This document shows positions 5,121 through 55,613 of a stretch of 64,000 nucleotides of DNA, piece by piece. This DNA comes from Octopus bimaculoides (lineage: Eukaryota): contig NC_068995.1 of NCBI RefSeq assembly GCF_001194135.2, positions 50,181,572-50,245,571 of the forward strand, read 5' to 3'. Made by a program: the position numbers and the translations under genes. Positions within the stretch are counted from its first letter, which is position 1, and each line of letters begins with the position of its first letter. Under the pieces are notes generated by a model, which saw nothing but the letters and a program-made list of their open reading frames with translations, did no database searches and was not told the origin of the DNA.

Positions 5121-5305
5121 CTGCAAAACAAATTCAGAAGGAGGGTGAAAATGTTACAGAGGTAAAGGAATTTGTGTTTATACAGATATATATGTGTGTG
5201 TGTATATATATATATTCTCTCTTTCCTTTCCTGAGCGTCCAATAATACTATCCATATCACGTCCTCACTTTGTTGTTTTTTTGTTTTTTTGTTATTGTTT
5301 TTTTG

Positions 5306-35009: not shown

Positions 35010-35520
35010 CTCCTAGCTTCCCTTCTGGTTATCTGATACAGTTCCATGCTACCCCAACTCTTTTGGGCCTTCCAGGCCTNNNNNNNNNNGATTTGGCATG
35101 GTTTTCTACAGCTGGATGTCCTTCCTAACACCAACCACTTTGAGAGCGTAATGTGTGCTTATACCTGTCTCCTAGCTTCCCTTCTGGCTATCTGATACAG
35201 TTCCATGCTACCCCAACTCTTTTGGGCCTTCCAGGCCTGTTTCCTCGCTCTAACAGCCCTGTCTACGGTATTGTTCCACCACCACATTATCCTAGGTCTG
35301 GAAGGGACTTTGCACCAGCCACAGATTTGGTCTGTGGCACTCAGCAAGCTATCCCACAGGAATTCCCAGTTGCCCACTATGTCACAAGTTTGTAGCTGCT
35401 CCTCTCTCTCATCAAATTTCTCAATTAGGATGTCCCTAAATCTCTGACCATATGAAAGGTCCTTAAGCTTTCAAATCCTTTTCCATATTGGTCTGCTTCT
35501 TGACATTGTTCTGGCCTGGA
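35010..35520 (-). mobile_element. RTE-type LINE fragment (endonuclease-RT linker)
   Basis: WEFLWDSLLSATDQICGWCK..WWWNNTVDRAVRARKQAWKA..YQIARREARRQV; appears to be the same family as 37590-38330. Confidence 0.7.
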
Positions 35521-35731: not shown

Positions 35732-36593
35732 AATTATTCTGGTGTTGTCTACAGAAAGTAATTTTATTGGTAAAAATGTGAAGAACATTAGAGCACATTT
35801 CCTTGGCAAATTTCAGATTATCGTTTTTCAGCCTTCAACCATATTCCATTCTCTGCAAAAAGAAATATTTGCCCTCCTATCTTAAGAGGAACCTAGAAAG
35901 AGAATTACCAGGAAATAAAGTCAGTAAGCATTGAGATATTTCAATTGCTGATGAATGATGAAGTGTAACAATCAATATCATGCGACTAATTAATGATACC
36001 TTTTAAAAAATTTCAGATTCAGTCAAAAGGTAAAATCTTCTAATTTTTATAACAGTTACAAAAACTCATTTATAAGTGAAGAATTCTTACCTTGTCCAAT
36101 GAAAATTTAGATTTCAAATAGTCAAAGTCATCACACAACACTTAAAATTCACTTTACTTCAGAAGATGCATTAACACTTCAAATGTCGATTTCCTATATC
36201 CCCAGGTGAGTTCCAAATTCATTTCTAACTATACTAGTGGGGCTGAGGGTACAGTAATAAACTATGCATTCAGCCAGCCAACATGCAATCCAGTTTCAAT
36301 TCCCAGTTGTATCGTCTAGACTTACCTCATTAATTGCATTGGAAAAAAATGTTATGATTCTGCTGAAAGGAACGAAGATCACGTCTTTCCTAAGATTATC
36401 TGAGGTGTCCAGAATTCCCAGTGGAATAATGTGTTACATTTTATTTCGTTTGTGATTTTGCATTAAGGTAACAGTAATAAATGTTTCATGAAAGAGATTC
36501 TATTAAATAGGAGATTATTAAAAACAATAATATTCTTCTACATATTTATCTCAGCTGAAGTTTAAAATAAATAAACTTAAAATGCAGATGTAG
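35732..36593 (+). CDS. Possible 3' extension of the membrane protein gene: 35732-35757, 35832-35923, 36017-36029, 36163-36205, 36555-36593
   Basis: A chain of AG/GT-bounded segments whose phases fit (0-2-1-2-0) and stay open from the 31379 donor, giving 236 aa in total. It overlaps the P450 last exon in antisense, and some splice sites are weak. Confidence 0.3.
35818..35892 (-). CDS. P450 exon 14 (VPLKIGGQIFLFAENGIWLKAEKR*)
   Basis: ctctttctag|GTT...CGA TAA; typical clan-3 C-terminus. Confidence 0.88.
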   Translation of the reverse strand, partial: VPLKIGGQIFLFAENGIWLKAEKR

Positions 36594-39500
36594 ACTTCCA
36601 ACAATTAACAAATGTAATTTGAAGTTGAATGGTTTGTAGTAAGAAAGACGTCCAGATTTCTTACAAAATTAGTGTGCAAAATATTCTGAGAAAAAGTATT
36701 TTTTTCACTACAACATCACACACACATACACACATATATACACACAGGTGTATCTGTAGTAACCTGAGCTACTACAGATAGCAGCCAAACCTCTCTTAAA
36801 ACACAGCCTTTCGTCAAAAGAAAGACACAGATTTACAGTATTTCAAGAAGAAGAAAAAAAGCAAAACTATGCAATGACTCTACTACATCAGAGGCAAATC
36901 TGGGCTAAACAAAACACAAATATACTTCACATTAGATTATCTACTAAATAATACTAATAAAGTTGACGGTATATCTTCAAAGTTTCATTCCCTCATAAAA
37001 CTCCATGTATTCTAAACATTTTCTCATTATGTTCTATGTAAGACGTAAAGATAAGGGAAGCAGAGTTGCAGAAAACATACTTTATTCGGTTGCTGAAAGA
37101 TTATGGAAACATTTTGATACCTCACACGTCAAAATCGACAACCAGGTTTTCAAATCCATAAGGAACATATGTGCGCACACACACATACACACACGCACAA
37201 ACTCTGTTTTATATATTAAGATTTCATATTCATATTATCTTACCTCGGTTTCCGGAGATTTCACAAATTTATATTTTCTGATTATGGTAGAGATAGCTAG
37301 CTTAAATTCTATTCTTGCCATTTTTTGGCCTATACACATTCTTGGTCCAAAGCCGAATGGTAAGAAGGTATAAGGATTCAATTTGTCTTTTGCTTCAGGT
37401 GCAAATCTGAAGATTAGAGTACCATTATTAGAAAATACCAAACGATTCGTAAATCATGACAGTTTTATGATACACTAAAAAGTAATATAAAATACATACA
37501 ATTTTAGAACAAGAATTTACCTTGTAAGGTGCATAATATATCGTTATTCATCTATATGTGTTTTGTATTGTAGCAAAGAACTACACCAGGTAGCTATGAG
37601 GGAAGATAGAAGACAGGTATGCTTGATCAAGGGAGAAGCAGAAAGGAGGAAGTTTGTTTATGTCTAGCGATGTGAAGACCAGAGGCTTGAAGTATTAGGG
37701 ATTGCAAAGCAGTCTCAGAGAAAACCGTGATGTGGTAGGAGAGCAATGTGTTTGCATAGATGATGGCTCACTTGTAGTTAGTGAGGCTGCAAAGAAGGAG
37801 GCTTGGAAGTGCTACTATGAAAGGTTGCTAAGTGTAGAAAATGCATGGGAGAAAGACAGCCTGCTTAATGTGAACCTAACAGAGGAACCAGCTATCTGGT
37901 TGACAGTAGCTTAGTAGATAAAGCAATTAAGGATATAGAGACAGGAAAAGCCTTCATCCCATCAGGAATCACTGCTGAGATGCTTAAAATATCTGACAGA
38001 GTGAGATATGACCTGGTCATCAATATAGTTAATCAGGTTGTCCAAGTGGGAGTCATGCCCAATGATCAGTGTAGCAATATTATAGTCAACTGCTACAAAG
38101 ACAAGGGTGATGCCCTAGACAGAAATAATTACAGAGGCATCAAATTTCTGGCCCAGGTGATGAAAGTTGACGAAAGGGACGTAGCTCAATTAATTAGGAA
38201 AAGAGTTAGCAGAGATGAGATGCGTGTGTGTGTGAGGTATTGGTATCCAGAAGACCCAAGATGGCAGATAAGGCTATGTATGTGCTACAGGAGGGCCATA
38301 GTTAGACTCTCAGTTCGATAATAATATCAATGAAGAGTCTAATGCGGGTCTAGTGTGAGCATGTATATGTTAAATAAAATGAGACAACAAAATGTTTTAA
38401 ATGTTTAATAATAAATATATATACATATATATTGGGTTAGATTGATGGTCAGTCTGCACGGATAGAAGAATTGGGAAGGTATGATGCTGGATGTCAGGAT
38501 CAGTAAAATTAAGAAGTTGACCATCAGATATCAGTGGATGTACAACATTTGTATTTTTATAGTGTAAAGTTACTATTCCCAGTCATAGTATCTGCAGGGT
38601 TGGGGTTGCAGAGTACAATAGCTTAACGATATGGTTATTAGATACTTGGTAAATATGTGCGTTTACATGCATGCACATGCACACATGTGTGTGGGGGCAT
38701 GCATGCATGTAGAATGCTTCTATATAGATTTTTTAAATATATATATATATTTTAAATATATTTATTTTTAAATATATCAATATTGGATTTCTTTGTTTTC
38801 TTATATCAAAATTTTAATAATTTACCTACCTTTCTGGAATAAACTTATCTGGTTCCGGCCAATATTCAGGGTCGTGCTGAAGGCTATAAATAGATATGTC
38901 TACAGGAATGTTCTTCGGAATTATCCAGTCCTTTATCTTAACAGTTTCCTTGGCATACCTCTGAAGCCTTTATAAATAAACAAAAGTGAAAATTCTTAAT
39001 AAATTGTAATATTAATTAAGAATACCTAAGAATAATTCTATAAAATATACAGATATATATTAAAGTGTCTAGCAGACACAATCATTAGCAAAACAGGGAA
39101 AATGTTTTGTGTTGGGCAAAATGCTACATTCTTAGTTCAAATTCCTCCAGTCTAACATATGATGTCATAATTTGTTGTAATGAAAAGTTATAAAATTTGG
39201 TACTAATATATATCTCTTATGGAACATATTTTTAAAAACAAGTGTAGAATATTGATATGAATAGGGAGCTATAGAATGGGAGATATGCCATTGGTACTAT
39301 TATGCATGTCTTATGGTACTATTATATGTTTCTTATGAAGCACATTTTTGGTACTATTATATATTTCTTGCGGAACACATTTTTCAAAACAATAAGGGAA
39401 GAATATTGATACAAATAGGGAGTTATGGAATTGGAGATGTGCCATTGGTTATCGTAACTTTCCTTTATAATTTTCACTGCCAAATTGTTCATTCACTTTT

Positions 39501-42500
39501 CAATTACTTGCTCGCTTCTCTTAAAAAAGGCCATAAACAACAAGTAGTCTTATATCCCTTCTCTATAGTTTTCATTCGTATTAAGTAGAATATATTCTAT
39601 TAACAAACCATACAGTTGATACAATTTAACGTGGGATATTCCTGATACAAATAAATAAAATTCATAATGCATCATTTTAGTTCACTTCTTTACAACAAAC
39701 ATTATTTAATTATTTCATATAGATGTAAACCTTGTAACACTACCTGAATGATGGAGGATACAGTCTAAGTATTTCAGATATACACATATCGAGGTAACTT
39801 AGTTTGTTCAAATCTTCAAACGTAGGTACTTTCTGCAAACAAATAAATATCAAATTCAATTCATTACACTGATCTGCTATTGAATCATAAATAAAATAAG
39901 TGAAATATAAGCATTTAACAAAATACAGTTTAGGACTATGTTGATATTAAATTCACAATAGTTACTGTCATTTCCACACTTTTGTGAGTAATCATAATTT
40001 GTTCATATCTTAATTTTGTAGTAAAAATAATTATTCTATTTTTATTAATATCCCAATAATATTAGTCAAAATATATATACACAAAGCAATATCTCACAAT
40101 CACCTCAGACATATGCAGCTAACTGAATAGCTTCTATAGTTAGAAATGTCTGACTGGCTTAGATAGACTTCTAAAATAATTAATGCTAAATTTCTCTAAT
40201 CATTTGTATTCACTATGACTGGAATTTGTAAGTCACAGACAACCAAATCTTTAGAGTGATGAGCTACCAAATTGCAGATCTCTTGCATTATGTTTGGACA
40301 CAAGTGCGATTCTTCAATACAATACATATTACTTGAATTCAAAACTGTTTATCACATAGTACAGCAGCACACATCACTACAACATCTTTAGTTTATGAAT
40401 TATTCAGCTATTATTAGGTTACTGACTTGCCAGCACACCAGGTGAAATGCTTGGCAGCAGTTTATACATCTTCAGGTGTTTTTTGCCGTTCATTCTTTCA
40501 GGGTTGATAAAATAAGTACCAGCTGAATACTTGTGTTGATGTAATCAACTTAGCCCCTCCCACCAAATTACAGGTCTTGTGCCAAAATCTTAAGGAAACT
40601 TACGTCACCAATTACATCCATCACTTCATCATATACCTTCTGCTGTATTTCTGGTTGAGTGGCAAGGATATAGGAAAAAAAACCCAATGCAGTTGAAGTT
40701 GTTAAGTGTGCAGCAAATAAGAACAACACCACCTGAGAAACAATTTCTTCATCTGTTAAACCTGCATTAATAAAAGATGGTAAATTGTGCTTATGTTGTT
40801 ATATAGTAAGATTGAAATATCCTGAACTAAGGATTCAGTCTTTTTGATAGAGACATATAGAACTTGCAGCTGGCAATAAATATACAGTAATGGAAGTGAG
40901 CAGATATAATTTTGGGGTGTTTACAAAGCCAATAGGAATAATTACAAACAGAACAGTTGAGCAACACACACACGTTTTGATTACAACAATGCAGTCATAT
41001 GTACTAGACACCAAAATATCTTTAAAAAAGACAGTAGTAACACGATGAGTAATTAACTACTTCTTTGTTAGATTTGTTTCTTCACACTGGCTTGCAACTC
41101 AATTTATGAACAGCTATGTTTTCCAATCATAGTGTTTGGATGATCTCTCTGTTGATTTGTTTTCTGATCTGATTGGACAAACGACTATTGTGTTGTGCTG
41201 GCTAGAGGACAGATACCATTACTATACCAATACTATCAGCCTTCGTTAGATAACTTAATTGTTTTTGTACACACTCACCCTTATCTGATAAGATTGCATG
41301 AATCCAATTTTTGTAATATCTACATCTTTCTCTTTCTCACGGCCTTGTTTCACCTTTATCTGACATTCTGCGTTTGCATTTGCAGCTATAATTGTGTCTG
41401 GTGACTGCATCATGTGATCTGCACGAGCTCTCCACTAGTTGGCACGAATGTTTCACTGTTCTCATTCTGCTCTCTCTCATGAAACGCAGAGAGCAGAATG
41501 AGAGCAGTGTATCTGCTGTGGATCAAATAAACGGTTAGGTCTGAAATTGCAATACAACAACTAAGTTCAACACAAGATGTCTGAAGAAGGCAGGAGCATA
41601 CAACAGCTGAAATGTAGTGAAAGCAACAATCAAGATGAATACACCAGTTCAACTAATGTAAACAGTCAAATTTTATACTGCTTCAGACACTGAAGACCTT
41701 ACAGGTTTTCATGGTTCTTGTGATTAAGACATCATTTCAGACAACTGTTTTTCTGGGTCTTACTGAAGCAGTAAAACCATAGCATAGAAAAGCACTATGC
41801 ACCCTCGTGCATTGGTAAAGATCTTCACTGGTGTATGCATTGCCATCAAGCATGCATCAGGTGCTTTTGTTTTTGGTGGTAGTTTTAAATTACTATTGTA
41901 CCTTCATGGTTTAATGATAGAGTTCTTCGTAGTTAACAGATTAGTTTGAATGAGTGGTACTTATGTGCATACATATAAAAACAATCATGCACACACAGAT
42001 ATATATATATATATATATATATCATTATACACACACAAATATACGTATATATGTGTGTGTGTGTGTATCATTCACTCATATATATATATATTAGTCTATT
42101 CTCTGCACATTCTTAGTGTTTATTGTACCCACACATTTGCTACACACAAAGTCTATTTTCTTTGTTAACCTTCCCATCATACCACTACGCCCTCTATGTG
42201 TTCAAAGCTTGCACTATGTAGTTTCTACTAACACACTTCTTACTTATCGAACAGGGCTGTCCCCTCGAAGGGATTTGTGATTTACCTGTTTTCCTACTTA
42301 CTAAGACTTTGGTCTTTTCTCAGTGAATTTCTGCAGAATATTGTATCTAAAGTGTTTATATACATTTTGTATATATACATCATTTTATATACATTTTATA
42401 TACATTTTATATACATTTTATATACATTTTATATACATTTTGTATATCAAACCTATATTTCAAATAACCAAATTACTTATTCTTTGTTATAATCAAAATT

Positions 42501-45500
42501 TACTTGCCTCTTTTCGACCTCCAGTCACGCATGTTCTCAAATGTGAGTGTTTCCAGTTCATGCTTCATATCATCGTCAATTTTATCAACATCTTCAAGTT
42601 TTGCATCCAACAAAAGTTGGAGAAAATCGTGTCTTACCTAAAACCGACAAGAAAATCTAGAAATATTAAATAGCTGAATAAAATTACTGAGGTTTTAATA
42701 TAAATATTAGGCATTCTAAGCACTAATTTTAGAAATATGCAATCACTGGATTTTACTGGTAGATTTCTTTGGACAAGTGGAACATTAATATGAATGAGAT
42801 GTATATCGTGATATGGCAAAATGCGATTTGGTATTCTATAAACGCATGATGAACAGAGCAGTAATATAGAAAACTCCTTTTTAATTTCTTGTAAATATGG
42901 TTAAATAGAAACTGTAATAAGGAAATGCAGAACATATATTTCATATTTTTCAGTAGATAGTATATAATTCTAATTGTCACTGTCTAATCTCATTTTCTTA
43001 CTGGAAAAAAATGATTTTCTTGCTTGTTATAAAAGACATTTAAAAAAACTTTGATTGAAAACAAACTATGGAATGCTCAATAACATTAAATAAATTTCAA
43101 ATATTACCGTTTTATTTTTTCTCCGTTCTGCTATAATATCTTTGGAAAACTTAGCCATAGTCTGCAATGAGCTGGAAAAGTTACTTTTGATTCCGAGTAA
43201 ACCCAGAATTTTTGGAATTACTGGAAATAATGCTGAAACAACAAATACTCCGTCTAATTAGTACTGTGTTTATATTGACGATAAGAATTTGTATTCCATG
43301 TAATAAACCAATAAACCTTAGTTTTTTTGAAATGAATGATATACATGTTAATAAATAAACTCACTGATCAAAACTAGGAACTTTGAAACTCAAGATATTG
43401 AGAATCTATTGAGAGTATGTTTGGTTTTAGTGAAATCAACAATTAAAACAGAACCAAATTTTCTCAACAAGCTTATATTCTAATTCAGATGAAAGAAAAA
43501 TGCTCTCCATCTCGCAGTCAACTGTTTTTGGCATTTTTGTGTTAATTCTGTAGAGGTAAATATTGTAAATGCAATGAAAGATAGGCTAGGTGCCTTGCTA
43601 TCTATAGATTTGTTCAAGAGAAAGTGGAATTTTCTGGAGAGAAAACAAAAGGCTTCAATTTAGTGTTGTATAATTCATGTATCTGAAGAGTGAATTGCAA
43701 TGATTTATTTATATATAAAGCGAAAAAAAGGAGCTTAATTTCAGCTTATTTTGTAACCAAGATAAAAGGTTATTGTGATATTTGCTGAGTGTGGCTTTTC
43801 CTTCTTTTCTGTACCTTTACCATAGTTACAGCCTTTCATGATGGTATAGAGGTTAAAATTTACACACACATACAAACTCATTTAAACATACATGGATTCA
43901 AGCACACACATGATGTGTGTCACTGCAATGCGCACAATTAATAACAACAAGGTCATATTCATTCAATAACATATCTTAAGAGAATAAATAAATATTTACT
44001 TTGAGCAGAAGTGATCGGGTTACGAAAATTGACATAAAAGAATTTGTCAAAGCATTTTATTAATGCATGATTTGGATTCTTCATTGAATTAACTTCGATG
44101 CCGAATGCTGTAGATGAAATCATATCAATCGTGTAATGAGAAAATATTCTGAAATAAAAATAGAGGTATAAGAAACTAAAATAATACTAAAACTCACTTT
44201 GCTCTGCTCTTTTAAATACTTTTTAATTGTGAACTATTGTTGTGCATTGAGTACATTTTAAAACAAAAGAGATGCTACTAGTATGTGACATGATGGTATA
44301 GATTCAATTCACGGGTTAAATTATTTCACATATCTTACATTGCTTATAATTATTGGAAATGTAGCAATTCCAGTTTTTCTCTCCAAATAGAAATATATCA
44401 TGCATAGTGAGAAAGACATGATTTCTTTTTTTTTTTTTTCTGCTTATTATAGAATTAACAAATTACTTGTAATTTTTCACTTGAATGGGTCAAATACCTA
44501 CATTGGTGCTCTTTGGCATAGACAGTACAATCCTTACTGAATGCCGAAACTTTCAGACGGGATGACAAAGGACCAGGATACCTGGTACCTTGCTGTATTC
44601 AAGAAGACCTATTGTCCACAGCAGAAGTGTTATGGTCGCATCCACTGGTGAAGGGGATTGGCCTACAAAAGTCCTGTGCCAGTGCCATATAAAAGCACTT
44701 GTGTTGGTGCCATGTTAAAAGCACCCAACACACATTGTAAAGTGGTTGGCATTAGGAAGAGTATCCAGCTGTAGAAACCAAGCAAAATCAAACTGGAACC
44801 TGGTGCAGTTCTCTGGCTTGCAAGCTTTAGTCAAGCTGTCCAACCCATGCCAACATGGAAAACGGACATTAAAGAATGATGATGATGATGATGATGATGA
44901 TGCTATGATAGTTTATACAAACATGGTTGTATAACTTGGTTAAAAATAAAGACTTTATTTGACATCAATACATAAACACTCTTACATACTTACACATAAC
45001 AACAAGAACAACACAAAAGTAAATCAGTTTAAACAGTGTCACTCACTGTTTTATTTCAACAGCTTTGTTACTGTCAGCAAAAAGTGAAAAGTTTTCTTCC
45101 AGGTTTTTCACAACACTATTCATAATTCCCATTGTCTGAAAGAAATTGAAATTCCCAAAATAGTTCTTATTCTTTTCTCATGCTTTTAGTTTTACTGCTG
45201 TAGACATTTAAGAGAGTTGATTTTCTAACAATTCTTGAAAATATAAATCATGTTATCTCTTCATTTTAACAATTCTCCCTACAACTACGGTCTACATTGG
45301 TCTTCTGACAGAAACTAGTTGTTGTATACTATTTCTACTTAATGCCACATGAAACACCTCCTCTTGTCACATCTGCTGTATCTTATCTTTAAAAGCTGCA
45401 CTAACCATACAGTCCAATAGCCTTCCCAGTCAACCAATAATCTGGAATTCATTTCCTACTGTGACAACTTGGTCAGTTAAAGTCTAGACAGTGTCACGTG

Positions 45501-47027
45501 ACAACTTGCTGGGGCTGCCTGCTGGAGCCTAGCAGCAGGTATTTAAAGGGAAATTTGACAAGACAGTCAGTCGGCTGTTGACACTCGTTGACACTGCATC
45601 GAAGAGGCCAGGGAACAGAACAAAGAAGACATGCACTCAACACCAGAGCTGAAGACGCCTCCGAAAGGTGAAACCGGATGTGGTTCCTCCTGATGATGTC
45701 TTGAGCCAACTGGCTCCTATAAAGGAGCTGTTGTGGTAGCAGACCACAAAACATGGTTGAAATTCCCCCCCCCCCCACTTCCTTTCCCATCAGTCATTGA
45801 ATTACTGAAATACATGAATACCTCAGGTCATTGAAAGCCAGCAGACATTTGTAAAGATCATTCCTCCTACCTAGGCCATTAGAAAAAAGGTATATTAATT
45901 AGTAGAATCAAATTCATTCTCCCCAACACAATTATAAAGTTATGTAATTGACATAATTAAGTGTGGTGAAATCTAATGATGAAAAGGTGTATCTTATAGA
46001 CTTTTATTAAGTCAATGTGTCAGCATTGAAGACTTTCTCCAGATAGTATATGGAAAATAAGCTTGGTAGCAACAATATCTGAGTTTGTTGTAAAGAGGAG
46101 TCTTGCCCTGGCACAACTATTAACATTATGATTTGTTAGATGATTACAGTTTATTACCTTTAACCAAATTTATAAAGCCTCTTGCTTATCAACTAATGAT
46201 TGAAGGAAAGGATAAATAATATTTAAATGTATTAACAACATATTTTAAATTAAGACTATATAAAAGGAAATGGAATTGATCTTACCTGTTTGAAGTGACT
46301 GGTACTGAAGGCTGGGAGCAGTAGAGTACGGGCAAACTTCCAATGATTGTCTGTGAGAAAGCTTATGAATTTATCCCCAATTTTGTCTGGTGGAAATACA
46401 TCCTATAAAGAACATGTGACATCTGATCAAATTTTTCTAAGAAATCTTTGCAGCAATAAAATGTGAAAACACCATGAAGAAGATATTACAAAGCAATTAT
46501 TCCATCTTTCTTTGAAATGAAAATAGAGAGAAAAGAGGAGAAATATATCACATTTTGTGGGGTAAATGAGAAAAGTCAAAAAAATTTCTGAATCTGCAAA
46601 TCAAATTTTGGATTAGGATAATCCACTGATAAACAACATTGTTTATCAGTGGATAAAATCTTTTTGCATTGGTAAAAGCTATGATCATATTAGCTTAATA
46701 TCCAAGTAATTGAAAATCAACTATCCTGGTTGTTGATGAGGACCTAGAAATTAACCAATTACCCTAGGGTCATTGATTTTGAGGTGCAAAAATCTTATTT
46801 ACTTATCTTATATACTGTTATCAATGTTTACCAGAAAAAGAAAAATCAGCATTCGTCGAATGAAAATGAAAATGTTGTTGAGAGAGAGAGAGAGAGAGAG
46901 TAATAGAGATAGAGTGAGTGAAAAAGAGAGAGTGTGTGTGTGTGTCTGTAGATAGATAGATAAATAGATAAAGAGAGAGAGAGAGAGAGAGAGAGGAAGC
47001 ATTCATCAATAAAGTGAAAAGGATTTT

Positions 47028-47120
<93 letters not shown>

Positions 47121-50100
47121 AGTGCTGTTTGATACCAATCCCTCTCTCATTATTATTACCATTTTGTTTCATCTCATTTTTTACTCTTACTCAACTCTGC
47201 TACTCCCTCATTGCGTGATTTTCGACAAACTTACAAACAAGCTCATTATTACAATAGATTTGTGCAGTTTTCTTAAAGCCAATTCAACGAGAGAACCTCT
47301 CTCTTGTGCCATTCAGCTGTAGGTTCACATCTTATTGAAAATCTATTAATGAGGCAAGAAAAGAAAGCTTAGATGCATGCCTGGATCTAAAACATCTTAA
47401 ATTTTAAAAAGTAAACTTACGTATCTATTTGAAAATATAGCAAACTGTTTGACGCAAATTTCTTTAACCATTTCTGGGTCACTGATGAGTATATGAGGTT
47501 GATTACAAATGTAAAATCTGTAAAAGTAAGAAAATATAGGAAAATTACAATTCAAATTTTCATATCTGCTCACAAAATTGCACTGTATATCTTCCAGAAG
47601 TTATAATATGATTGGTTTTTGTGTCTACAGCATAGACAGTAAAATTTCCACAACACTATTATCATCATTGTTTAACGTCCGCTTTCCATGCTAGCATGGG
47701 TTGGACGATTTGACTGAGGACTGGTGAACCAGATGGCTACACCAGGCTCCAATCTGATTTGGCAGAATTTCTACAGCTGGATGCCCTTCCTAACGCCAAC
47801 CACTCAGAGAGTGTAATGGGTGCTTTTACGTGCCACCGGTACGAAGGCCAGTCAGGAGGTACTGGCAACGGCCACGCTCAAAATGGTGTATTTTACGTGC
47901 CACCTGCACAGGAGCCAAAACTAACATTTCAGTGATTGTTAACATATTTAAAGTTGGAAGTAAAATAATTAACAAGAAACAATTATGTTTTAACAAAAGA
48001 AAATATTTACTAAAGATTAAAATTAAATGAATTACTTTGACATGTACTGGCAACAAATATAGATATAATTGTTGATCTAAATGAGCTTTGGTGATGTTGT
48101 ATCACCAACTGACTTGAATAACTGTGCCACACACTCAATACAGATGTTAAAGTATCTTGACACAATAATACAACTGATACATAAAGTTATATTTCTAATG
48201 GAACAACAATGATCAATGCTTAATAGAAAATATGAGAGAAATAGAAATATCACCGGCAATACAACAGCACTGGACACATGGTTATAAATCCCTGTCACTG
48301 TTATCAAATATGTAAGGACATGCATGTGTACGTATGTGGTGTGCATGTGTTTACGATCCTGAGAGTGTGGAAGCATTCCAGTATATATATATATNNNNNN
48401 NNNNCACACACACACATTGAGAAAGGCTAAAGAGCTAGAAATGCACATGTGGCAATCTGTTACATGGAAACACTGAATTGATATGGTGTTTTTACACCGT
48501 TTATCATAAGAGAGAATCTTTTCTCCATTGCAGCTGCAGTGAATTTTCCTTTGGAAGTCGAAATATGTTGCAAATATATTTTAATTATCCTAAAATTTAT
48601 ATATATCTATTTTCTTACCCCCAGTTGCACTTCATGAGGTGTAAACATTAAAATGTACACATTTAGTCATCACATCAGAATGAGATATAACGGTTAAAAA
48701 TGTTCATACCCTGTTACTTCTCCATATTTCTGCTTCATTTCTTTGTCAAATGTTGCCATTCCCTAAAAAAGAATAACTAAATTGTTATTTCAATATAGAA
48801 AGGTTTAATTATTTGTTGTTTTCACTTTTCCAAGATAATATTTTTATGAATAGTCTTGCATTAATAAACATATTTAGTTTTATTTACATAAAGATCCAAT
48901 CACAATTTTATTATAAAGAAACAAAGTAAAGAAAAAAAATGGGGTGGGAGGGATTAAGCATCAGAAAATGGGTGGGGTGGGGTGACAACACCTCCAGAAT
49001 AAAATAGTACAATCAAATTCTGCCAAGACTGATTTTATCTTTCATCTTTTTAGGGTTGATAAAAAAGTACCAGTTGAACACAGGAGGGGGAGGAGGAAGA
49101 AGAGTAATCGACTTATCCCTTCCCCAAAATTGCTGGCTTTGGGCAAAAAATTTGAAACCAATATTACATGCACACACGCACAGACACAAACACACACACA
49201 CAAACCAGGAAAATGAAGAGTTTCTACTGGTTGGTATATTTTAAAAAGTACAAAGAANNNNNNNNNNNNNNNNNNNNNNNNNNNNNNNNNNNNNNNNNNN
49301 NNNNNNNNNNNNNNNNNNNNNNNNNNNNNNNNNNNNNNNNNNNNNNNNNNNNNNNNNNNNNNNNNNNNNNNNNNNNNNNNNNNNNNNNNNNNNNNNNNNN
49401 NNNNNNNNNNNNNNNNNNNNNNNNNNNNNNNNNNNNNNNNNNNNNNNNNNNNNNNNNNNNNNNNNNNNNNNNNNNNNNNNNNNNNNNNNNNNNNNNNNNN
49501 NNNNNNNNNNNNNNNNNNNNNNNNNNNNNNNNNNNNNNNNNNNNNNNNNNNNNNNNNNNNNNNNNNNNNNNNNNNNNNNNNNNNNNNNNNNNNNNNNNNN
49601 NNNNNNNNNNNNNNNNNNNNNNNNNNNNNNNNNNNNNNNNNNNNNNNNNNNNNNNNNNNNNNNNNNNNNNNNNNNNNNNNNNNNNNNNNNNNNNNNNNNN
49701 NNNNNNNNNNNNNNNNNNNNNNNNNNNNNNNNNNNNNNNNNNNNNNNNNNNNNNNNNNNNNNNNNNNNNNNNNCGAAACTGTGTTCTAAAAGTGCTGTGT
49801 ATCCCACCCACACTTAACAAGACAAATTTTTTTTGTTCTGCAAGTACTTGGTGACTCTTTCAGTGCAGGTGCCACTTAAAAGAAGCCAGTCCACACTGTA
49901 AAGTGGTTGTTCGGAAGGGCATCCAGCTGTAAAAATCTTGTCGAAACTGACCTCATCTGTGCTTGTGTCACGTAAAAAGCACAACTCACCTCCCTTGTGC
50001 TTGTGCCACAAAAAAAAAAAAAAAGGCACTAAATCCACTTTGCTGAGTGGTTGGTGTTTGGAAGGGCATTCAGCTGTAAAAATCCTGCCAAAACAGTCAT

Positions 50101-52897
50101 AGAAGTCTGGTGCAGGTTTTGGCCCAACCAGCTCTTGTGAAACCAACCCACCCATGCTAGCATGGAAGGCAGACGTTAGACGACGATGATGATCAAGGCA
50201 GTGACATAGCAGAATCATAACCATGCCAGGCAAAATGATTAGCGGCATTTCATCTGTCTTTATGTTCCGATTTCAAATTCCACTGAGGTCAACTTTGCTT
50301 TCCATCCTTTTGGGATCGATAAAATAAGTACAAATTACTGGCCTTGTGCCAAAATTTGAAAACAATATTAAGACAGGGATCAAGGCAACAAGCTGGCAGA
50401 ATCATTACCATGATGGACAGAATACATTTCATCTGTCTTTATGTTCAGAGTTCAAATTCTACTGAGGTTGATTTTGCCCTTCACCCTTTCATGGTGAATA
50501 AAATAAGTACCAGGTGAACATTGGAGTCGATGTAATTGTCTTGCTCCCTTAGTTTGGGGTTGTCAAAGTAGTTATTTGATGTTGGCCTATTGATAGGTCA
50601 CACTATAATCTGAGGAGTTACAATGGCCCCCACATAACATAAGTAATATTTGTTAAATATTCTCAAATATACACCTTTATTTCAAAACTTTGCTTACAAA
50701 TATTAAAACATTTTGTAGAAGTGATTTTATGAAGGTAGTCTGATTGATAAATCTTCTCGACTATTGATACACCAGTATCTACTTCTGATAAGTCACATAC
50801 CTGATTTTATCAAAATTTTTGGTAAAAAATGTGCAACCTATTTACAAGTATACATGATAATTTTTTTATCATTCAGCCATCTAAGTCCATCAAACAAAGT
50901 ACACATAGAGTATGAAAAATTCAAATGCCACCTACCTTCTTCATGACTTCTAACAAATTTCCGAAAAAGAACCATGGCTCTGGGCCAGGAATATTGATAT
51001 TTTTGAAGTAACTGTATGGTTGTTTTGTCAATCTAATATGTAATTGAAAAAACATTACATGCAAGATTATTGTTTATAAAATTTAGAAATACTTGAACTA
51101 AAATAATTGAATTAGTTTATAATGAAAAATAAAATATATTAGATCATAGAAATGCACTCACCGCTTTCAATTTGAGAAATGTTGAAATATGAGATATGTT
51201 CATTGTGTAGTTTTAGAAGCCTAAAGTCTCACTCCTTTGTTGTCTCAGTCCCTTGTTGTCTCCTCTGTGAAGCCCAACATCTGAAGACCCTTTCTCAAAA
51301 TTTCATCCCAAATTTTCACTCCTCAAGTAGAGATTGGAAATTCTCGATGCAGCTGTCCTCGTCCATATGCATCATATGACCATATCAGCACAATCTTCTC
51401 ATTCACTACATCTAATGCCTCATATACCCAACTTTTTTTTCCAATCACTTACACCATCATACATGCACACTGACATTATCCATCCAGTGGAGTATGCTGG
51501 CTTCATTTCTTTCAAACCTTCACATGCTGTCAGTGGTCACAGCCCATGTTTCACTGCCATGTGGTACATTGGATCTCAAGGATTGCCAGAATGTTCTGAA
51601 ATGTTTCTTGAACAGACACCTTTTATTGGATTAATAATCTCCCCCTCCCACATCCCCGACACCCTCCCTTCAGCACCCATCACACCTCTCCCCCGTATCC
51701 ACTACAATCCCACACGTCACCACCCGGACATTTCTATTCCGACCCTGAACCCACTCCCTTCACCACCCTGATCACTATACCACCCAACCTTCCCCTGTCT
51801 GCTGCCGAATGCTTACTCCTCAGCAAGGGTCTTTGCTTCACACCTATCATGCCCCAGTGCAACAAATTTAGGACCCGCACTGATGTCAGCTAGTTCCTGC
51901 ACCGCATCAAACTACGCGTGTTTTTCCACACGTCCACACAGTGTCATGACAATCGGGATTGTTTCTTGAAGCTGGGGTGCTACCCATCCTACTGGACTCT
52001 GCCTCCAGGCCAGTTCAGCAGCCTGGACTTGTTCATGCATGACTGCAATGCGCTGGTCAACTGATTCAATTTCGAAAAATGATCCCTCTGGACCAACATC
52101 ACCTGGGCTGAATTGATCATCTTCACTGCAATGACATCATTGTCAGGCCAGCAGACAGAGGTGGAGCAGTGGTGGTGTGGCGTGTGGACCTATACAGGGA
52201 GGAAGTACTCAGTCAGCTTCGAGACCCTCTCTTCTATTGCCTCCTCCTCTCTTTCCCCACCTCCCCCAACCAGCAGCACATGTCCTCAACCATCCATGAC
52301 CTCGTCTCCTCTTCTGCCTTCCCCTCTACTGCCACCAACCTCATCGTCCGAATGCCCCGTACCTCAACCATCTTTTTCCTTCCCAAAACACATAAACACA
52401 CAGTTACCACCACCCGCATACACATACACGCACACAATTACAGCCACAGACATACACTCACGTGCGCACGCACATACCCACACATACACACGTGCGCACG
52501 CACATACCCACACATACACACGTGCGCACGCACGCACACATACCCACACATAAACCCAGATACCTCCTTCTCTTACACTCTCGTGACTTAGAAAGAACTT
52601 TTTCTTCATCCATTCCCTTCCGGTCATTCCAAAATGTAACTACATGTGGATTGTTGGCGATTTTGGCACCAACAATTTTTAAAAAGTGGTGGAGGGGTCG
52701 AGTTACGTCTCCGCCATATGCACCGCGATTTTTTTTTTTTCGCCATCTTCCTTTTCTCTTGGACTTTCCTGTCTTCTCTTTCTGAAGAAGAGCTTTGCTC
52801 GAAACGTAAAACTGACTTTCCTTCCACGAGCGTCTCTTAATACTTTGCCGGTACCACGTCCTCGCGTTGTTTTTTCTCCGCTTTTTGGATTAATTAT

Positions 52898-53904: not shown

Positions 53905-55613
53905 ACTTGTACTTTTTTCCTTATATATTTTGCTTTTCTTATCTCTTCCTGTCTCCTTCTTTTACTCGTCTGCCTCGCATTCAAATTTCTCTCAGTCTCT
54001 CTGCCATCATCCCCCTATGTAACATTGTGTGTGTGTGTGTGTGTGTGCGCGATCGCATACGTATGAGAAACAAACAGAGATGCTTTGCCCCACACAGAAA
54101 CTGCAGGAGCTACTCAGCAGTTTTGTAAGCTATTCTAAATCCATTGCAATGCTGGTAACCCTTCCATATCGTCAGCAAGTATCTCAGGGTCACTGAACTG
54201 GTCTTCACCAACCAAAGGGTTTCACTTGCGGTCTCTTATCAACCATAGCTATCTTGAGCAAGTTTTAGATGTGCCTATTTTATCGATGGCTTTCTTCAGT
54301 TGTCCGAGTCCCAGACCTATTTTCTGCAGGAAATAACACACCGACCCACATGAAAAGATGCGGCAGCCGATTTCAGTGGAAATAAGGCTGCAAGCCAGCC
54401 TCGTTATCTAAGTCCTAATATTTCGATTTCTTTACTTGGTGGGAAATATCGAGTCTGTCCTCCTAGGGCACAGTAAGTTCGACCACGATGCAGGAACCTG
54501 CAGTGCAAAAATATCTCTAGTTGGGGTGAGGTTACCACTATCTTCTCTCGAAAAACAAGTCTACCCCTCAGGTCAACTTGCATCTCCCAGTCTAAGGTTT
54601 AATACAAAATGGCAAACGGTTCGCCTTTCATTACTTTCGCCTTCGTCGCCTTTCTTTAGGAATTTGGTACCCTTTTTTGGTGGTGGGTGGTGTTTATTAG
54701 CCTTCACCCTTTGCAGATTAGTCCACTAGGCGATTTCGGCAAGAACCTCGTCATATCTCCCAATTTCCAGCCCCACAAAAACCACTCAAAAATAATTTTT
54801 CATGAGTTTTAAAACAGAGATGTAGTTACAAGTAAAATGACAATTATAAAGAAGAGAATGCAAAAGAAATATGTAAACTGGTCTTATTAACTGAGTTACC
54901 TTAAAGATGGGACGATTCGTGTGCTCGTACTTCAAGANNNNNNNNNNACGATTCGTGTGCTCGTACTTCAAGACAAAAATTCGCACGAGTCTCGGCTCGT
55001 ACAGCAAATTACTCATACAATGGGGCACTCGTATTGCGAGGTTCTACTGTATAAACAAAGGCACACAGCGTACTGATGGTGTAAGTGAGATGTTGATATA
55101 AGAGGAGGAATTGACAATTGGAGAACAATGTCAACGATGGCATAAGCGCAGATAGCGTAGACTCTTGAGTGCCACAATATGTCCACACTAATAGCACTAG
55201 AGACCTATTGGAGAGAAATTTCTTTTGAAATTTGCCCGTAAACTCGGTATTCTGTCGTGCATTGCAGTAAAAGGTGAACAAAAGTGTGAAAAAAGTGAAC
55301 TCATAGAATTAACTCTTACAACATTTTAATAAATTATCTTTTAAATGAGCTTTTATGTAAAAACAATTAATTGATATTTAAAAACGGTCATAGCGAGTAT
55401 AGAATTTTTAGTCATAATGAGAATACAAATGTTTTAGTTATAACGTTAGTATAAATATTTTAGTAATTTAGTTGGTATAATATTTTACAATTCGAAGTTT
55501 GTGCAATTGTTTTCTGTATAAGAAGCTGATAAATTTACTTACATATATAATAGCAGAAGAGCAATCGAGAGGAGAACACAATTCGGTATAGTAAAGAAGG
55601 TGAAGGTATCCAT
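35818..55613 (-). CDS. Cytochrome P450, clan 3 (CYP3A-like), complete, 14 coding exons, 1551 nt = 516 aa
   Basis: The joined exons give an N-terminal anchor, IPGPEPW, C-helix WKFAR, K-helix EILR, FIPERF and the heme motif FGFGPRMCIG. All phases are compatible with no stops; 12 introns are GT-AG and one is GC-AG. AATAAA (minus strand) at 35763-35768. Confidence 0.95.
37244..37406 (-). CDS. P450 exon 13 (heme motif FGFGPRMCIG)
   Basis: 163 nt, aatcttcag|A...GAG|gtaaga. Confidence 0.95.
37590..38330 (+). mobile_element. RTE-type LINE fragment (linker plus RT N-terminus) in P450 intron 12
   Basis: AKKEAWKCYYERLL..KAIKDIETGKA..GITAEMLK..IVNCYKDKGDALDRNNYRGIKFL..VMKV. Confidence 0.82.
38830..38967 (-). 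CDS. P450 exon 12 (HDPEYWPEPDKFIPE)
   Basis: ttataaag|G...AG|gtaggt. Confidence 0.92.
39744..39832 (-). CDS. P450 exon 11 (K-helix EILR)
   Basis: gtttgcag|AAA...AG|gtagtg. Confidence 0.92.
40604..40761 (-). CDS. P450 exon 10 (I-helix)
   Basis: taatgcag|GT TTA ACA GAT GAA...GAC|gtaagt; LTDEEIVSQVVLFLFAAHLTTSTAL. Confidence 0.93.
41440..41700 (+). mobile_element. Probable PLE pseudo-LTR fragment with a CpG-decayed hammerhead core
   Basis: CTGAAGA-A-GGC...GCT-GAAA-TGTA (41581-41616). Boundaries are approximate. Confidence 0.45.
42385..42441. repeat. 11-bp minisatellite (TACATTTTATA)n
   Basis: About five tandem units in P450 intron 9. Confidence 0.85.
42508..42637 (-). CDS. P450 exon 9 (RHDFLQLLLDA), GC donor
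   Basis: ggttttag|GTA...AGAG|gcaagt; only the GC site gives the phase 1 needed by exon 10. Confidence 0.85.
43108..43232 (-). CDS. P450 exon 8
   Basis: ttgtttcag|CA...ACG|gtaata; ends IIAERRKNKT. Confidence 0.9.
44000..44148 (-). CDS. P450 exon 7 (YTIDMISSTAFGIEVNS)
   Basis: 149 nt, ttatttcag|A...A|gtaaat. Confidence 0.92.
45047..45135 (-). CDS. P450 exon 6
   Basis: 89 nt, tctttcag|ACA...CA|gtgagt. Confidence 0.88.
45490..45770 (+). mobile_element. Probable PLE pseudo-LTR fragment with a degenerate hammerhead core
   Basis: GC-rich island containing ggtatttaaa and CTGAAGA-C-GCC-tccgaaa-GGT-GAAAC (45649-45674). Confidence 0.45.
46286..46402 (-). CDS. P450 exon 5 (C-helix WKFAR)
   Basis: ctttatag|GAT...CAG|gtaaga; 39 codons. 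Confidence 0.92.
47030..47119. repeat. (GA)n microsatellite, representative of many (CA)n/(TA)n/(CAT)n/(AAAG)n tracts
   Basis: Directly visible. Other large tracts at 3715-4000, 5308-5368, 16880-17010, 17940-18410, 58060-58170. Confidence 0.97.
47421..47517 (-). CDS. P450 exon 4 (FYICNQPHILISDPEMVKEICVKQFAIFSNRY)
   Basis: ttttacag|A...TAC|gtaagt. Confidence 0.92.
47660..47915 (-). mobile_element. SINE/retroposon 3' module family B with (GAT)n tail (representative copy)
   Basis: CACGTAAAAGCACCC..AGGAAGGGCATCCAGCTGT..CCCATGCTAGCATGGAAAGCGGACGTTAAAC-GATGAT. Other copies at about 905-1200, 3245-3460, 5660-6130, 10515-10810, 16960-17160, 18920-19108, 24190-24620, 30620-30790, 34820-35000, 35530-35700, 44690-44900, 49870-50190, 60940-61140. 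Confidence 0.82.
48710..48762 (-). CDS. P450 exon 3 (GMATFDKEMKQKYGEVTG)
   Basis: 53 nt, ttttttag|GGA...GG|gtatga. Confidence 0.9.
50936..51032 (-). CDS. P450 exon 2 (LTKQPYSYFKNINIPGPEPWFFFGNLLEVMKK)
   Basis: catattag|A...AAG|gtaggt; proline hinge PGP. Confidence 0.92.
51230..51640 (-). mobile_element. RTE-type LINE 3' fragment
   Basis: Decayed frame with ..KLGI*GIRC.. and ..YGHMMHMDEDSCIENFQSL.. Confidence 0.6.
52459..52550. repeat. 30-bp tandem repeat (cacgtgcgcacgcacatacccacacataca) x~3
   Basis: Directly visible, between the PLE RT remnant and its pLTR. Confidence 0.8.
52779..52811 (+). ncRNA. Minimal type I hammerhead ribozyme candidate in a PLE pseudo-LTR
   Basis: CUGAAGA (52782-88) + extra A + stem II GAGC/UUU/GCUC + GAA + palindromic helix III ACGU + A17 (52808); 3-bp helix I UUU/AAA. 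Confidence 0.6.
53401..53520 (+). mobile_element. 120-bp MITE-like hairpin
   Basis: 28-bp arms 53401-53428 and 53493-53520 are reverse complements with 1 mismatch; the outermost bases are TA...TA. Confidence 0.7.
54150..54640 (-). mobile_element. HERO/R2-like non-LTR retrotransposon, restriction-like endonuclease C-terminal fragment
   Basis: DWEMQVDLRGRLVF..IVVTS../IVVELTVP*EDRLDISHQVKKSKY../ISTEIGCRIF..LWLIR, resembling the RLE motifs ELTVPWE and PxEVGCRGF. Confidence 0.72.
54910..55051 (-). mobile_element. Pogo/Tigger-like terminal fragment
   Basis: The minus strand reads TA|CAGTAGAACCTCGCAATACGAG, with repeated subterminal (g)ctcgta motifs; the other end was not found. Confidence 0.5.
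55543..55613 (-). CDS. P450 exon 1 (MDTFTFFTIPNCVLLSIALLLLY)
   Basis: 71 nt, TATAT|gtaagt, phase 2. Confidence 0.88.

What the first reader, a model, noticed from the sequence alone, without database searches (positions are those of the whole stretch)
40697..40714. Intact clan-3 P450 with a rewired oxygen-activation motif (AAHLTT for AGxETT)
Seen: the I-helix reads LFLFAAHLTTSTAL (GCT GCA CAC TTA ACA ACT). Gly is replaced by Ala and the acidic residue by Leu, while WxxxR, ExxR, PERF and FxxGxRxCxG are canonical and the 516-aa frame is intact. Established: the acid-alcohol pair delivers protons for O2 activation. P450s that deviate there often have unusual chemistry or substrate-assisted catalysis (CYP5A1 thromboxane synthase, CYP8A1, CYP7A1, CYP51 His-Thr, CYP74). 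Inference: this may be a non-standard monooxygenase or an isomerase/peroxide-using enzyme.
Basis: partly seen in the sequence, partly recalled or inferred. Interest (0 to 1): 0.7.

Follow-up and report, generated by a model that had tools for sequence, protein, structure and literature searches.

The report
Octopus P450 lacking its proton-relay acid
This is a real, intact octopus CYP3-like cytochrome P450 gene in which the glutamate that normally feeds protons to bound oxygen has been replaced by leucine. The change is shared with sister octopus species, but the gene is evolving about three times faster than its normal-looking paralogue, so it is a modest curiosity and not a demonstrated new enzyme type.

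Summary
On the minus strand at 40714-40697 the codons GCT GCA CAC TTA ACA ACT read AAHLTT. They align to CYP3A4 A305-G306-Y307-E308-T309-T310, so G->A and E->L. The gene is Octopus bimaculoides XP_014772532.1 ('cytochrome P450 3A8'). It has 14 coding exons (55613-35818), all splice sites are usable, the product is 516 aa, and all assembly gaps lie in introns.

The change is not an assembly error and is not private. O. vulgaris copy A has the identical 18 nt. O. sinensis reads AADLTT and O. vulgaris copy B reads ASHFAT. The nearest paralogue keeps AGHETT.

The scaffold is preserved: 54 of 60 family-conserved positions match, the AlphaFold model has pLDDT 90, and it matches CYP3A4 with TM 0.92-0.94.

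Constraint is weakened. dN/dS is 0.46-0.69, against 0.16-0.21 for the canonical paralogue at the same dS. The two O. vulgaris duplicates evolve near neutrality. One copy has lost a splice donor and one has a frameshift.

About 4% of other clan-3 relatives also lack the acid. The proposed analogy to thromboxane synthase fails, because that enzyme keeps Glu and loses Thr.

Most likely this is a down-tuned or specialised monooxygenase in a fast-evolving detoxification family. Incipient decay is the main rival explanation. Interest is low to moderate.

The parts
40697..40714 (-). I-helix oxygen-activation hexapeptide A326-A327-H328-L329-T330-T331 (GCT GCA CAC TTA ACA ACT). It is equivalent to CYP3A4 A305-G306-Y307-E308-T309-T310.
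40604..40761 (-). Coding exon 10 (158 nt). It encodes most of the I-helix (model helix 313-344 = 40753-40658). Acceptor cag|GT, donor GAC|gtaagt.
55543..55613 (-). Coding exon 1 (ATG at 55613-55611), encoding the N-terminal membrane anchor. Isoform X1 merely starts 18 codons further upstream.
50936..51032 (-). Coding exon 2 (PGPEP hinge at 50989-50975).
48710..48762 (-). Coding exon 3.
47421..47517 (-). Coding exon 4.
46286..46402 (-). Coding exon 5 (WKFAR, the C-helix WxxxR, at 46342-46328).
45047..45135 (-). Coding exon 6.
44000..44148 (-). Coding exon 7.
43108..43232 (-). Coding exon 8.
42508..42637 (-). Coding exon 9. It has a GC (not GT) donor, which is conserved in the O. sinensis and O. 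vulgaris copies but not in paralogue P0004.
39744..39832 (-). Coding exon 11 (K-helix EILR = ExxR at 39775-39764).
38830..38967 (-). Coding exon 12. The PERF motif begins at 38837 and continues into exon 13.
37244..37406 (-). Coding exon 13. It carries the heme-thiolate loop FGFGPRMCIG at 37357-37328 (Cys462).
35818..35892 (-). Coding exon 14, including the stop codon (35820-35818).

Best explanation
The locus is a genuine, intact, Octopus-lineage paralogue of the CYP3 clan (microsomal type, CYP3A4-like fold). Its I-helix acid was replaced before O. bimaculoides and O. vulgaris/sinensis separated. The replacement GAA->TTA needs two nucleotide steps. The preceding Gly also became Ala.

Shown: the protein keeps everything needed to fold, anchor in the membrane and bind heme through Cys462. 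It also keeps the Thr-Thr pair.

Inferred: it still binds and reduces O2 with electrons from P450 reductase. Without Glu329, the protonation of the ferric-peroxo and hydroperoxo intermediates must go through Thr330 plus ordered water or the substrate. That makes it a slower, less coupled or more substrate-dependent monooxygenase, possibly one biased toward non-standard outcomes as in other acid-less P450s.

Shown: consistent with reduced catalytic demands, the gene is under weakened but still detectable purifying selection, within a gene family that duplicates and decays rapidly.
For: - The window gene is an intact 14-exon ORF with usable splice sites. O. vulgaris copy B is also intact.
- 54 of 60 positions that are >=80% conserved in 153 relatives are kept. 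These include W127/R131, E382/R385, R395, P436/R438/F439 and F455-G464 with Cys462. Apart from G327A, the deviations are to common alternatives.
- The structure model is confident (pLDDT 90.2, pTM 0.90) with a continuous I-helix. The best structural matches are CYP3A4/3A5/3A7 with TM 0.92-0.94.
- The loss of the acid is shared by four copies in three species: L, L, L and F.
- The paralogue codon is GAA against TTA here, which is two steps.
- Omega is significantly below 1 (Fisher p = 0.006 to 0.0001). The O. bimaculoides branch carries 19-43 replacements, against roughly 86 expected under neutrality (my arithmetic from the counts, using dS and N).
- The ancestral stem, which already lacked Glu, changed little: 4 polarised replacements.
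- There is a precedent that acid-less, Thr-retaining P450s are active. In CYP114 the acid is Ala or Val, and its absence is required for ring contraction, while A261D gives only hydroxylation (PMC10293830).
- Other clan-3 relatives without the acid exist. One cluster (AGQHTT) comes from Logan run assemblies on short contigs that I read as transcript-derived, which suggests expression.
Against: - Omega is about 3 times that of the canonical paralogue at equal dS (0.46-0.69 against 0.16-0.21; p = 1e-4 to 1e-3).
- After duplication in O. vulgaris both copies evolve at neutral N:S ratios.
- O. vulgaris A has lost the exon-10 donor, and O. sinensis has a frameshift in exon 10.
- The motif is not held fixed: AADLTT and ASHFAT also occur.
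- No transcript, read or biochemical evidence was available.
- No orthologue was found outside three closely related Octopus species.
- Only one control gene was used for the rate comparison.
Confidence: 0.5

Rival explanations
1. Incipient non-functionalisation. Loss of the proton-relay Glu crippled catalysis in a redundant member of a multi-copy detoxification family. The gene is now drifting. The O. bimaculoides copy simply has not yet acquired a disabling lesion.
For: - Omega is elevated about 3-fold over the canonical paralogue.
- Omega is about 0.92-0.98 between the O. vulgaris duplicates.
- There are independent lesions in exon 10 of O. vulgaris A (donor GT->AT) and O. sinensis (1-nt deletion).
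- O. vulgaris B has additionally lost the alcohol Thr (ASHFAT).
- At least 19 replacements lie on the O. bimaculoides branch alone, against 22 for both branches of the control.
- Long-term distances to outgroups equal those of the paralogue, so the acceleration is recent.
- No orthologues were detected in other cephalopods.
Against: - The window ORF and all 26 splice signals are intact over about 20 kb.
- Omega is significantly below 1.
- All heme-binding and fold-determining invariants are retained in all four copies.
- Most derived changes in O. bimaculoides are conservative.
- The lesions in the other species are unverified in reads and could be assembly errors. The O. sinensis genome is a long-read assembly (my recollection; not checked here).
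Confidence: 0.33
2. One reading: an O2- and reductase-independent isomerase or peroxide-using enzyme that rearranges fatty-acid hydroperoxides or endoperoxides, like CYP5A1, CYP8A1 or CYP74.
For: - The acid that serves O2 activation is dispensable for such chemistry.
- The acid position is hydrophobic (Leu or Phe) in all copies.
- One conserved basic C-helix-region residue is replaced in the lineage (K142H). This could hint at weaker reductase docking, but that is an inference only.
- TXS and PGIS are self-sufficient P450s, and TXS is in the same clan (PMC13049297).
Against: - CYP5A1 shows the opposite pattern: Glu kept, Thr replaced by Ile345 (PMC13049297).
- The octopus protein keeps Thr330-Thr331, which serve hydroperoxo-iron chemistry.
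- The Cys loop has canonical length and sequence, with no CYP74-type insertion.
- Annotated thromboxane synthases are no closer than CYP3A-like proteins (about 34% identity).
- The pattern of relaxed constraint is not expected for a newly essential signalling enzyme.
Confidence: 0.1
3. Sequencing, assembly or annotation artefact. The true sequence would be canonical AGxETT, or the exon would not belong to the gene.
For: - The window comes from a gap-rich draft assembly (10 N runs).
Against: - O. vulgaris copy A, from an independent assembly of another species, has the identical 18 nt. O. sinensis and O. vulgaris B also lack the acid.
- Three nucleotide differences separate the motif from the paralogue's AGHE codons.
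- The exon has canonical splice sites and sits in the same position and phase as exon 10 of the paralogue, with the same length of 158 nt.
- No gap lies within 1.9 kb of the exon on the nearer side.
Confidence: 0.01

Closest known systems
Human CYP3A4 / CYP3A5 / CYP3A7 (CYP3 family, clan 3 microsomal xenobiotic monooxygenases)
   Same: - These are the best sequence matches among solved structures (E = 5.5e-100, alignment over residues 23-516).
- They are also the best structural matches (TM 0.92-0.94, 36% identity).
- They share the N-terminal anchor, PGP hinge, WxxxR, ExxR, PERF and Cys loop.
- The multi-exon gene layout looks similar (CYP3A exon count is from memory, not tested here).
   Different: - The I-helix reads AAHLTT instead of AGYETT. 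The equivalent of Glu308 is Leu and the equivalent of Gly306 is Ala.
- Identity is only 36%, below the 40% convention for membership of the same CYP family.
- There is an extra acidic insert between helices G and I (residues ~275-300, low pLDDT).
Octopus bimaculoides XP_014788122.1 (P0004), the nearest canonical paralogue, and the cuttlefish 'TBXAS1' cluster (P0125 / CAE1143300.1)
   Same: - Identity is 44-46%.
- P0004 has 14 coding exons; 12 of the 14 exon lengths are identical, including the 158-nt I-helix exon, and exons 9 and 14 differ.
- P0004 has His at the x position (AGHETT).
- All three lineages are equally distant from one another.
   Different: - The paralogues keep Gly and Glu (AGHETT, AGYETT).
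- P0004 evolves with omega 0.16-0.21, against 0.46-0.69 for the window gene.
- P0004 uses a GT donor and a shorter exon 9.
CYP114 of bacterial gibberellin biosynthesis (an acid-less, Thr-retaining P450)
   Same: - It has the same local pattern: the acid of the acid-alcohol pair is replaced by a small or medium hydrophobic residue (Ala or Val there, Leu here) while the Thr is kept.
- It shows that such enzymes can be active, and that absence of the acid can redirect the reaction (PMC10293830).
   Different: - It is a bacterial, soluble, ferredoxin-dependent enzyme with no specific homology beyond the superfamily.
- In CYP114 the hydrophobic residue is conserved family-wide, whereas here the motif drifts among close relatives.
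Thromboxane synthase CYP5A1 (clan 3) and other peroxide-rearranging P450s (CYP8A1, CYP74)
   Same: - CYP5A1 is in the same clan.
- All have a non-canonical acid-alcohol pair and chemistry that does not need proton-assisted O2 activation.
   Different: - CYP5A1 keeps Glu and replaces Thr with Ile (AGYEI345ITNT, PMC13049297), which is the reverse of AAHLTT.
- The octopus protein shows no closer similarity to annotated TXS than to CYP3A.
- It has no CYP74-type Cys-loop insertion.
Other acid-less clan-3 relatives: Lingula XP_013394381 (AGFSTT), chiton Liolophura XP_064613083 (AGYATT), mite Medioppia (TGYLTT), scorpion Centruroides XP_023219934 (AGYFTT/SGYFTT), and an unnamed cluster from Logan run assemblies (AGQHTT)
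   Same: - These are CYP3-like animal P450s with a non-acidic residue, including Leu and Phe, at the same I-helix position and with Thr retained.
   Different: - They are independent origins at 30-45% identity.
- None is characterised, so they show recurrence, not function.

Membership tests
Cytochrome P450 superfamily (PF00067) | Heme-thiolate loop FxxGxRxCxG with the ligand Cys | tested here: met
   FGFGPRMCIG at 37357-37328, with Cys462. Every conserved loop position matches 153 relatives.
Cytochrome P450 superfamily (PF00067) | K-helix ExxR and PERF (PxRF) triad | tested here: met
   E382-I-L-R385 and P436-E-R438-F439.
Cytochrome P450 superfamily (PF00067) | Profile match and P450 fold | tested here: met
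   Pfam E = 1.2e-101 over positions 2-458 of 462. AF2 pLDDT 90.2. Foldseek TM 0.92-0.94 to CYP3A4.
Cytochrome P450 superfamily (PF00067) | I-helix (A/G)Gx(E/D)T(T/S) acid-alcohol motif of O2-activating monooxygenases | tested here: not met
   AAHLTT. Gly->Ala occurs in 4.6% of 303 related domains. Glu/Asp->Leu is a change at a position that is acidic in 94.7% of them. Thr-Thr is retained.
CYP3 clan (clan 3: CYP3/5/6/9-like) | Best reciprocal similarity to CYP3-like proteins rather than to other clans | tested here: met
   All top database hits are annotated CYP3A-like, TBXAS or CYP6/9. The best PDB hits are CYP3A4/5/7, and the next is CYP4B1 at E = 1e-44.
CYP3 family proper (nomenclature rule) | More than 40% amino-acid identity to a named CYP3 member | tested here: not met
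   Identity to CYP3A4/3A5/3A7 is 33-37%. The RefSeq name 'cytochrome P450 3A8' is an automatic label.
Thromboxane synthase (CYP5A1) type | I-helix AGYEIITN: Glu retained, distal Thr replaced by Ile | tested here: not met
   The window protein has Leu at the Glu position and keeps Thr-Thr. The TXS motif is taken from PMC13049297.
Thromboxane synthase (CYP5A1) type | Orthology to TBXAS1 | tested here: not met
   Annotated thromboxane synthases score 30-34% identity, no better than CYP3A-like proteins.
Thromboxane synthase (CYP5A1) type | NADPH/reductase-independent isomerisation of PGH2 | not testable with these tools
   This needs an enzyme assay.
CYP74 / CYP8A peroxide-rearranging P450s | Loss of the distal Thr (Asn or a non-polar residue at the distal position) and, in CYP74, an insertion in the Cys loop | tested here: not met
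   T330-T331 are retained and the Cys loop has canonical length.
Unitary or duplicated pseudogene | Frameshift, premature stop or destroyed splice site | tested here: not met
   None is present in the window gene. The feature is met in relatives: O. vulgaris A has an exon-10 donor AT, and O. sinensis has a 1-nt deletion in exon 10.
Unitary or duplicated pseudogene | Neutral evolution (omega not different from 1) | tested here: inconclusive
   Pairwise omega is 0.46-0.69, which is below 1 (p <= 0.006) but 3 times the control. Omega specific to the O. bimaculoides branch could only be bracketed at about 0.2-0.5 (my arithmetic).

The most novel reading that the evidence does not exclude
The Leu-for-Glu I-helix is an adaptive, selectively maintained state. 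On this reading, Octopus has a microsomal CYP3-clan enzyme that has abandoned Glu-mediated proton delivery and performs non-hydroxylating or substrate-assisted chemistry. Candidates are CYP114-like rearrangement or desaturation, or use of lipid peroxides. The burst of replacements in the distal pocket of the O. vulgaris duplicate (A327S, L329F, T330A) would then reflect positive selection for new activities rather than decay. This would be the first animal clan-3 example of a functionally rewired acid-alcohol pair of this type.
Probability: 0.12. Interest if true: 0.6.

Novelty: new variant of a known kind. Interest (0 to 1): 0.28.

Why it matters
If the enzyme is active, it would be a natural experiment on how a CYP3A4-like microsomal P450 works without the conserved proton-relay acid. 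That bears on coupling, peroxide-shunt use and reaction redirection. It would also add to the small set of acid-less P450s with known consequences, such as CYP114 and CYP255.

If the gene is decaying, it documents the birth-and-death dynamics of detoxification P450s in cephalopods. It also warns that automatic names such as 'cytochrome P450 3A8' hide catalytically atypical members.

Either way the practical impact is limited. The gene is already annotated, and similar deviations recur in about 4% of its relatives.

Tried and rejected
1. A short-query protein search (exons 9-11, 126 aa) was meant to catch transcript-derived fragments or other octopod orthologues. It returned only 9 word-sharing candidates and no hit, not even the self protein. 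It is uninformative, so expression could not be assessed.

2. Literature searches found nothing specific to this gene. One search covered an octopus or cephalopod CYP3 inventory and one covered CYP3A4 E308/T309 mutagenesis.

3. The head-to-head P450 neighbour called in the O. sinensis locus could not be identified by tblastn. Its first exon is too short, and the equivalent position lies just beyond the window end.

4. A second dN/dS control from the AGYETT group (P0005, P0006, P0008) was rejected. Those proteins are only 63-72% identical across species and are probably not one-to-one orthologues.

5. RNA editing as a way to restore the acid was rejected. A-to-I changes cannot turn TTA into GAA or GAG.

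6. A shifted register, with an acid one residue away, was rejected. There is no Asp or Glu between residues 316 and 346 of the window protein. Asp328 appears only in the frameshifted O. sinensis copy.

7. A lifelong fast-evolving lineage was rejected. Distances from cuttlefish and other mollusc outgroups are the same for the window protein and the canonical paralogue.

8. RT-like intronic ORFs gave no significant Pfam match.
Full report
**1. Observation**

The reported 18 bases lie on the minus strand. The window at 40697-40714 reads agttgttaagtgtgcagc, and its reverse complement is GCT GCA CAC TTA ACA ACT, which translates to AAHLTT within ...VSQVVLFLFAAHLTTSTALGFFSY....

The sequence is eukaryotic. 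The motif sits in a 158-nt exon bounded by cag|GT and GAC|gtaagt.

A spliced reconstruction starting at the ATG at 55613 gives 14 coding exons ending with a stop at 35820-35818:
- All acceptors are AG.
- Twelve donors are GT and one is GC (exon 9).
- The translation is exactly the 516-aa database protein P0002.
- The ten N runs in the window all fall in introns or outside the gene.

Pfam p450 matches at E = 1.2e-101 over almost the whole profile.

**2. Identity**

The protein is Octopus bimaculoides XP_014772532.1 / A0A0L8HGD1, automatically named 'cytochrome P450 3A8'. Isoform X1 only adds 18 N-terminal residues.

The closest solved structures are human CYP3A4, 3A7 and 3A5 (E = 5.5e-100). The ungapped I-helix alignment maps A326-A327-H328-L329-T330-T331 onto CYP3A4 A305-G306-Y307-E308-T309-T310. 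Leu329 therefore replaces the acid of the acid-alcohol pair, Ala327 replaces the groove Gly, and the alcohol Thr is kept.

An AlphaFold2 model built on 64 homologues is confident (pLDDT 90.2, pTM 0.90) with a continuous I-helix at 313-344. It superposes on CYP3A4/5/7 with TM 0.92-0.94 at 33-37% identity. It is a clan-3 P450, but it falls below the 40% convention for the CYP3 family proper.

**3. How unusual is the motif?**

I tabulated 303 P450 domains from 253 relatives, gathered by a word-indexed search and an exhaustive representative search:

| Position | Residue counts |
|---|---|
| 329 (acid) | Glu 196, Asp 91 (94.7% acidic) |
| 327 | Gly 282, Ala 14 |
| 328 | His 66 (22%) |

His328 is therefore ordinary, and it is ancestral, because the nearest paralogue reads AGHETT.

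Thirteen non-octopus domains (about 4%) also lack the acid:
- AGFSTT in Lingula
- AGYATT in a chiton
- TGYLTT in a mite
- AGYFTT and SGYFTT in a scorpion
- AGQHTT in a cluster from Logan run assemblies (short contigs, which I read as transcript-derived)

The deviation is uncommon but recurrent.

**4. Is it fixed in orthologues?**

I fetched the orthologous loci and extracted every exon at nucleotide level. O. vulgaris has two tandem copies.

| Copy | I-helix motif | State |
|---|---|---|
| O. bimaculoides (window) | AAHLTT | Intact, 516 aa |
| O. vulgaris A | AAHLTT (identical 18 nt) | ORF intact, but the exon-10 donor is AT instead of GT |
| O. vulgaris B | ASHFAT (acid and alcohol both lost) | Fully intact, 512 aa, all splice sites canonical |
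| O. sinensis | AADLTT | 1-nt deletion later in exon 10 causes a frameshift |

The canonical paralogue's codons are GCT GGA CAC GAA ACA ACA. Glu->Leu therefore took two nucleotide steps.

The loss of the acid predates the O. bimaculoides / O. vulgaris split (dS about 0.13-0.15). It is neither an assembly error nor a private change.

**5. Constraint**

Pairwise dN/dS between the window gene and its orthologues is 0.46-0.56 by NG86 and 0.52-0.69 by LWL85, YN00 and ML.

The matched control is the canonical paralogue P0004 against its O. sinensis orthologue P0267. It has the same 14-exon structure and nearly the same dS (0.131). It gives 0.16-0.21.

- The window gene differs from the control (Fisher p = 1e-4 to 1e-3).
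- The window gene also differs from neutrality (p = 0.006 to 0.0001).
- The two O. vulgaris copies differ from each other at omega 0.92-0.98.
- Polarised with O. bimaculoides, copy A carries 16 N: 5 S changes and copy B carries 20 N: 3.5 S. Neutral expectation is about 3.9: 1. Copy B's changes include A327S, L329F and T330A within 10 nt.

Of 47 fixed amino-acid differences between O. bimaculoides and the other three copies, at least 19 are derived on the O. bimaculoides branch and 4 on the other stem. The control pair has 22 differences in total. This brackets omega on the window gene's own branch at roughly 0.2-0.5 (my arithmetic).

Distances from cuttlefish and other mollusc outgroups are equal for the window protein and the paralogue (about 1.0 against 0.95). 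The lineage is therefore old and its acceleration is recent.

**6. Specificity of the change**

Of 60 alignment columns that are >=80% conserved in 153 relatives, the window protein matches 54. The mismatches are G327A plus Y367F, H422Q, M465Q and R466K. The last three are each to the second most common residue, and Y367F is a conservative change to a minor alternative.

All heme-propionate, ExxR, PERF and Cys-loop residues are retained in all four octopus copies. The departure is concentrated in the O2-activation motif.

A handful of lineage-specific replacements are shared by all copies, such as T/S135L, K142H and M146T. None introduces a new acid near the I-helix. No Asp or Glu lies between residues 316 and 346.

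**7. Mechanistic reading**

Established knowledge: the acid delivers protons to the iron-oxygen intermediates, and the alcohol stabilises compound 0 (PMC11842817, PMC10293830).

Inference: without Glu329 but with Thr330, the enzyme should still bind heme and O2. It would have to protonate via water or the substrate, giving slower, less coupled or redirected chemistry.

CYP114 is the best functional precedent. Its acid is Ala or Val, its Thr is kept, and absence of the acid is required for ring contraction, while restoring Asp gives only hydroxylation (PMC10293830).

- Thromboxane synthase keeps Glu and replaces Thr by Ile345 (PMC13049297).
- CYP74-type features are absent.
- The His is not in the CYP51 register.

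I therefore favour a down-tuned or specialised monooxygenase under weakened selection (0.5). The rivals are incipient decay (0.33), a peroxide isomerase (0.1) and an artefact (0.01).

**8. Limits**

- No reads, transcripts or biochemistry were available.
- A targeted search for transcript fragments failed technically.
- Only one control gene was used.
- The lesions in O. vulgaris A and O. sinensis are unverified.
- No orthologue outside three close Octopus species was found, so the time of the Glu loss is bounded only on one side.

**9. Verdict**

This is a new variant of a known kind: an annotated CYP3-clan P450 with an acid-less I-helix that is shared within a genus. There are clear signs of relaxed constraint, and relatives show the same feature. 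Interest is about 0.28.

Noticed in passing
window 4725-5126 and 8762-9124 (minus strand): Two ORF segments are exons of an unrelated neighbouring gene, Integrator complex subunit 14. The Pfam IntS14 beta-barrel domain scores E = 6e-6, and there is a weak VWA_2 hit. The gene lies downstream of the P450 on the same strand.
   Followed up: partly
L002 (O. vulgaris OX597828.1) copy A ~7545-37307 and copy B ~47690-80586: The P450 is tandemly duplicated in O. vulgaris (dS about 0.04 between copies). The public 697-aa protein model (P0001) is a chimera that skips exons 10-11 of copy A and runs into copy B. Copy A's exon-10 donor is AT.
   Followed up: yes
L002 68394-68573 (O. vulgaris copy B exon 10): Three amino-acid replacements lie within 10 nt inside the I-helix motif (A327S, L329F, T330A). 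This is far more clustered than the roughly 20 derived changes in the rest of the gene would predict. The cause could be selection, a complex mutation or gene conversion, and it is unresolved.
   Followed up: partly
L001 ~31117 (O. sinensis exon 10): A single-base deletion (CCTTG-CACTCAG) shifts the frame just after the I-helix. The RefSeq model XP (P0003, 509 aa) reads the shifted frame (…ILALSQKYSRRYMMK) and then regains the frame of the downstream exons, presumably through an alternative donor. It is either a real pseudogenising lesion or a long-read indel error.
   Followed up: partly
window 42506-42507 (donor of exon 9, minus strand): This is a GC-AG intron. The GC donor (GGC|gcaagt) is conserved in O. 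sinensis and in both O. vulgaris copies. The canonical paralogue P0004 uses GT there and has a 91-nt rather than a 130-nt exon 9.
   Followed up: yes
window 878-971, 10480-10573, 16963-17056, 18899-18992, 34800-34893, 47623-47716, 60902-60995 and families D4-D13: There are many copies of short interspersed repeats. One family begins with a (CAT)n run followed by GTTTAACGTCCGCTTTCCATGCTAGCATGGGTTGG.... They are scattered in both orientations through the P450 introns and flanks. (TA)n and (CA)n microsatellites border most N gaps.
   Followed up: partly
proteins P0150, P0273, P0275, P0276 (Logan run assemblies on short contigs, organism unknown): A CYP3-like cluster, about 36% identical to the window protein, carries AGQHTT. 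This is the His-Thr arrangement typical of CYP51, found here in a clan-3 background and consistent across four full-length members.
   Followed up: partly
window 37980-38321 (+) and ~35162-35470 (-): Intronic ORF fragments look like remnants of retroelement proteins. There was no significant Pfam match, only a spurious weak ECSIT_N hit.
   Followed up: partly
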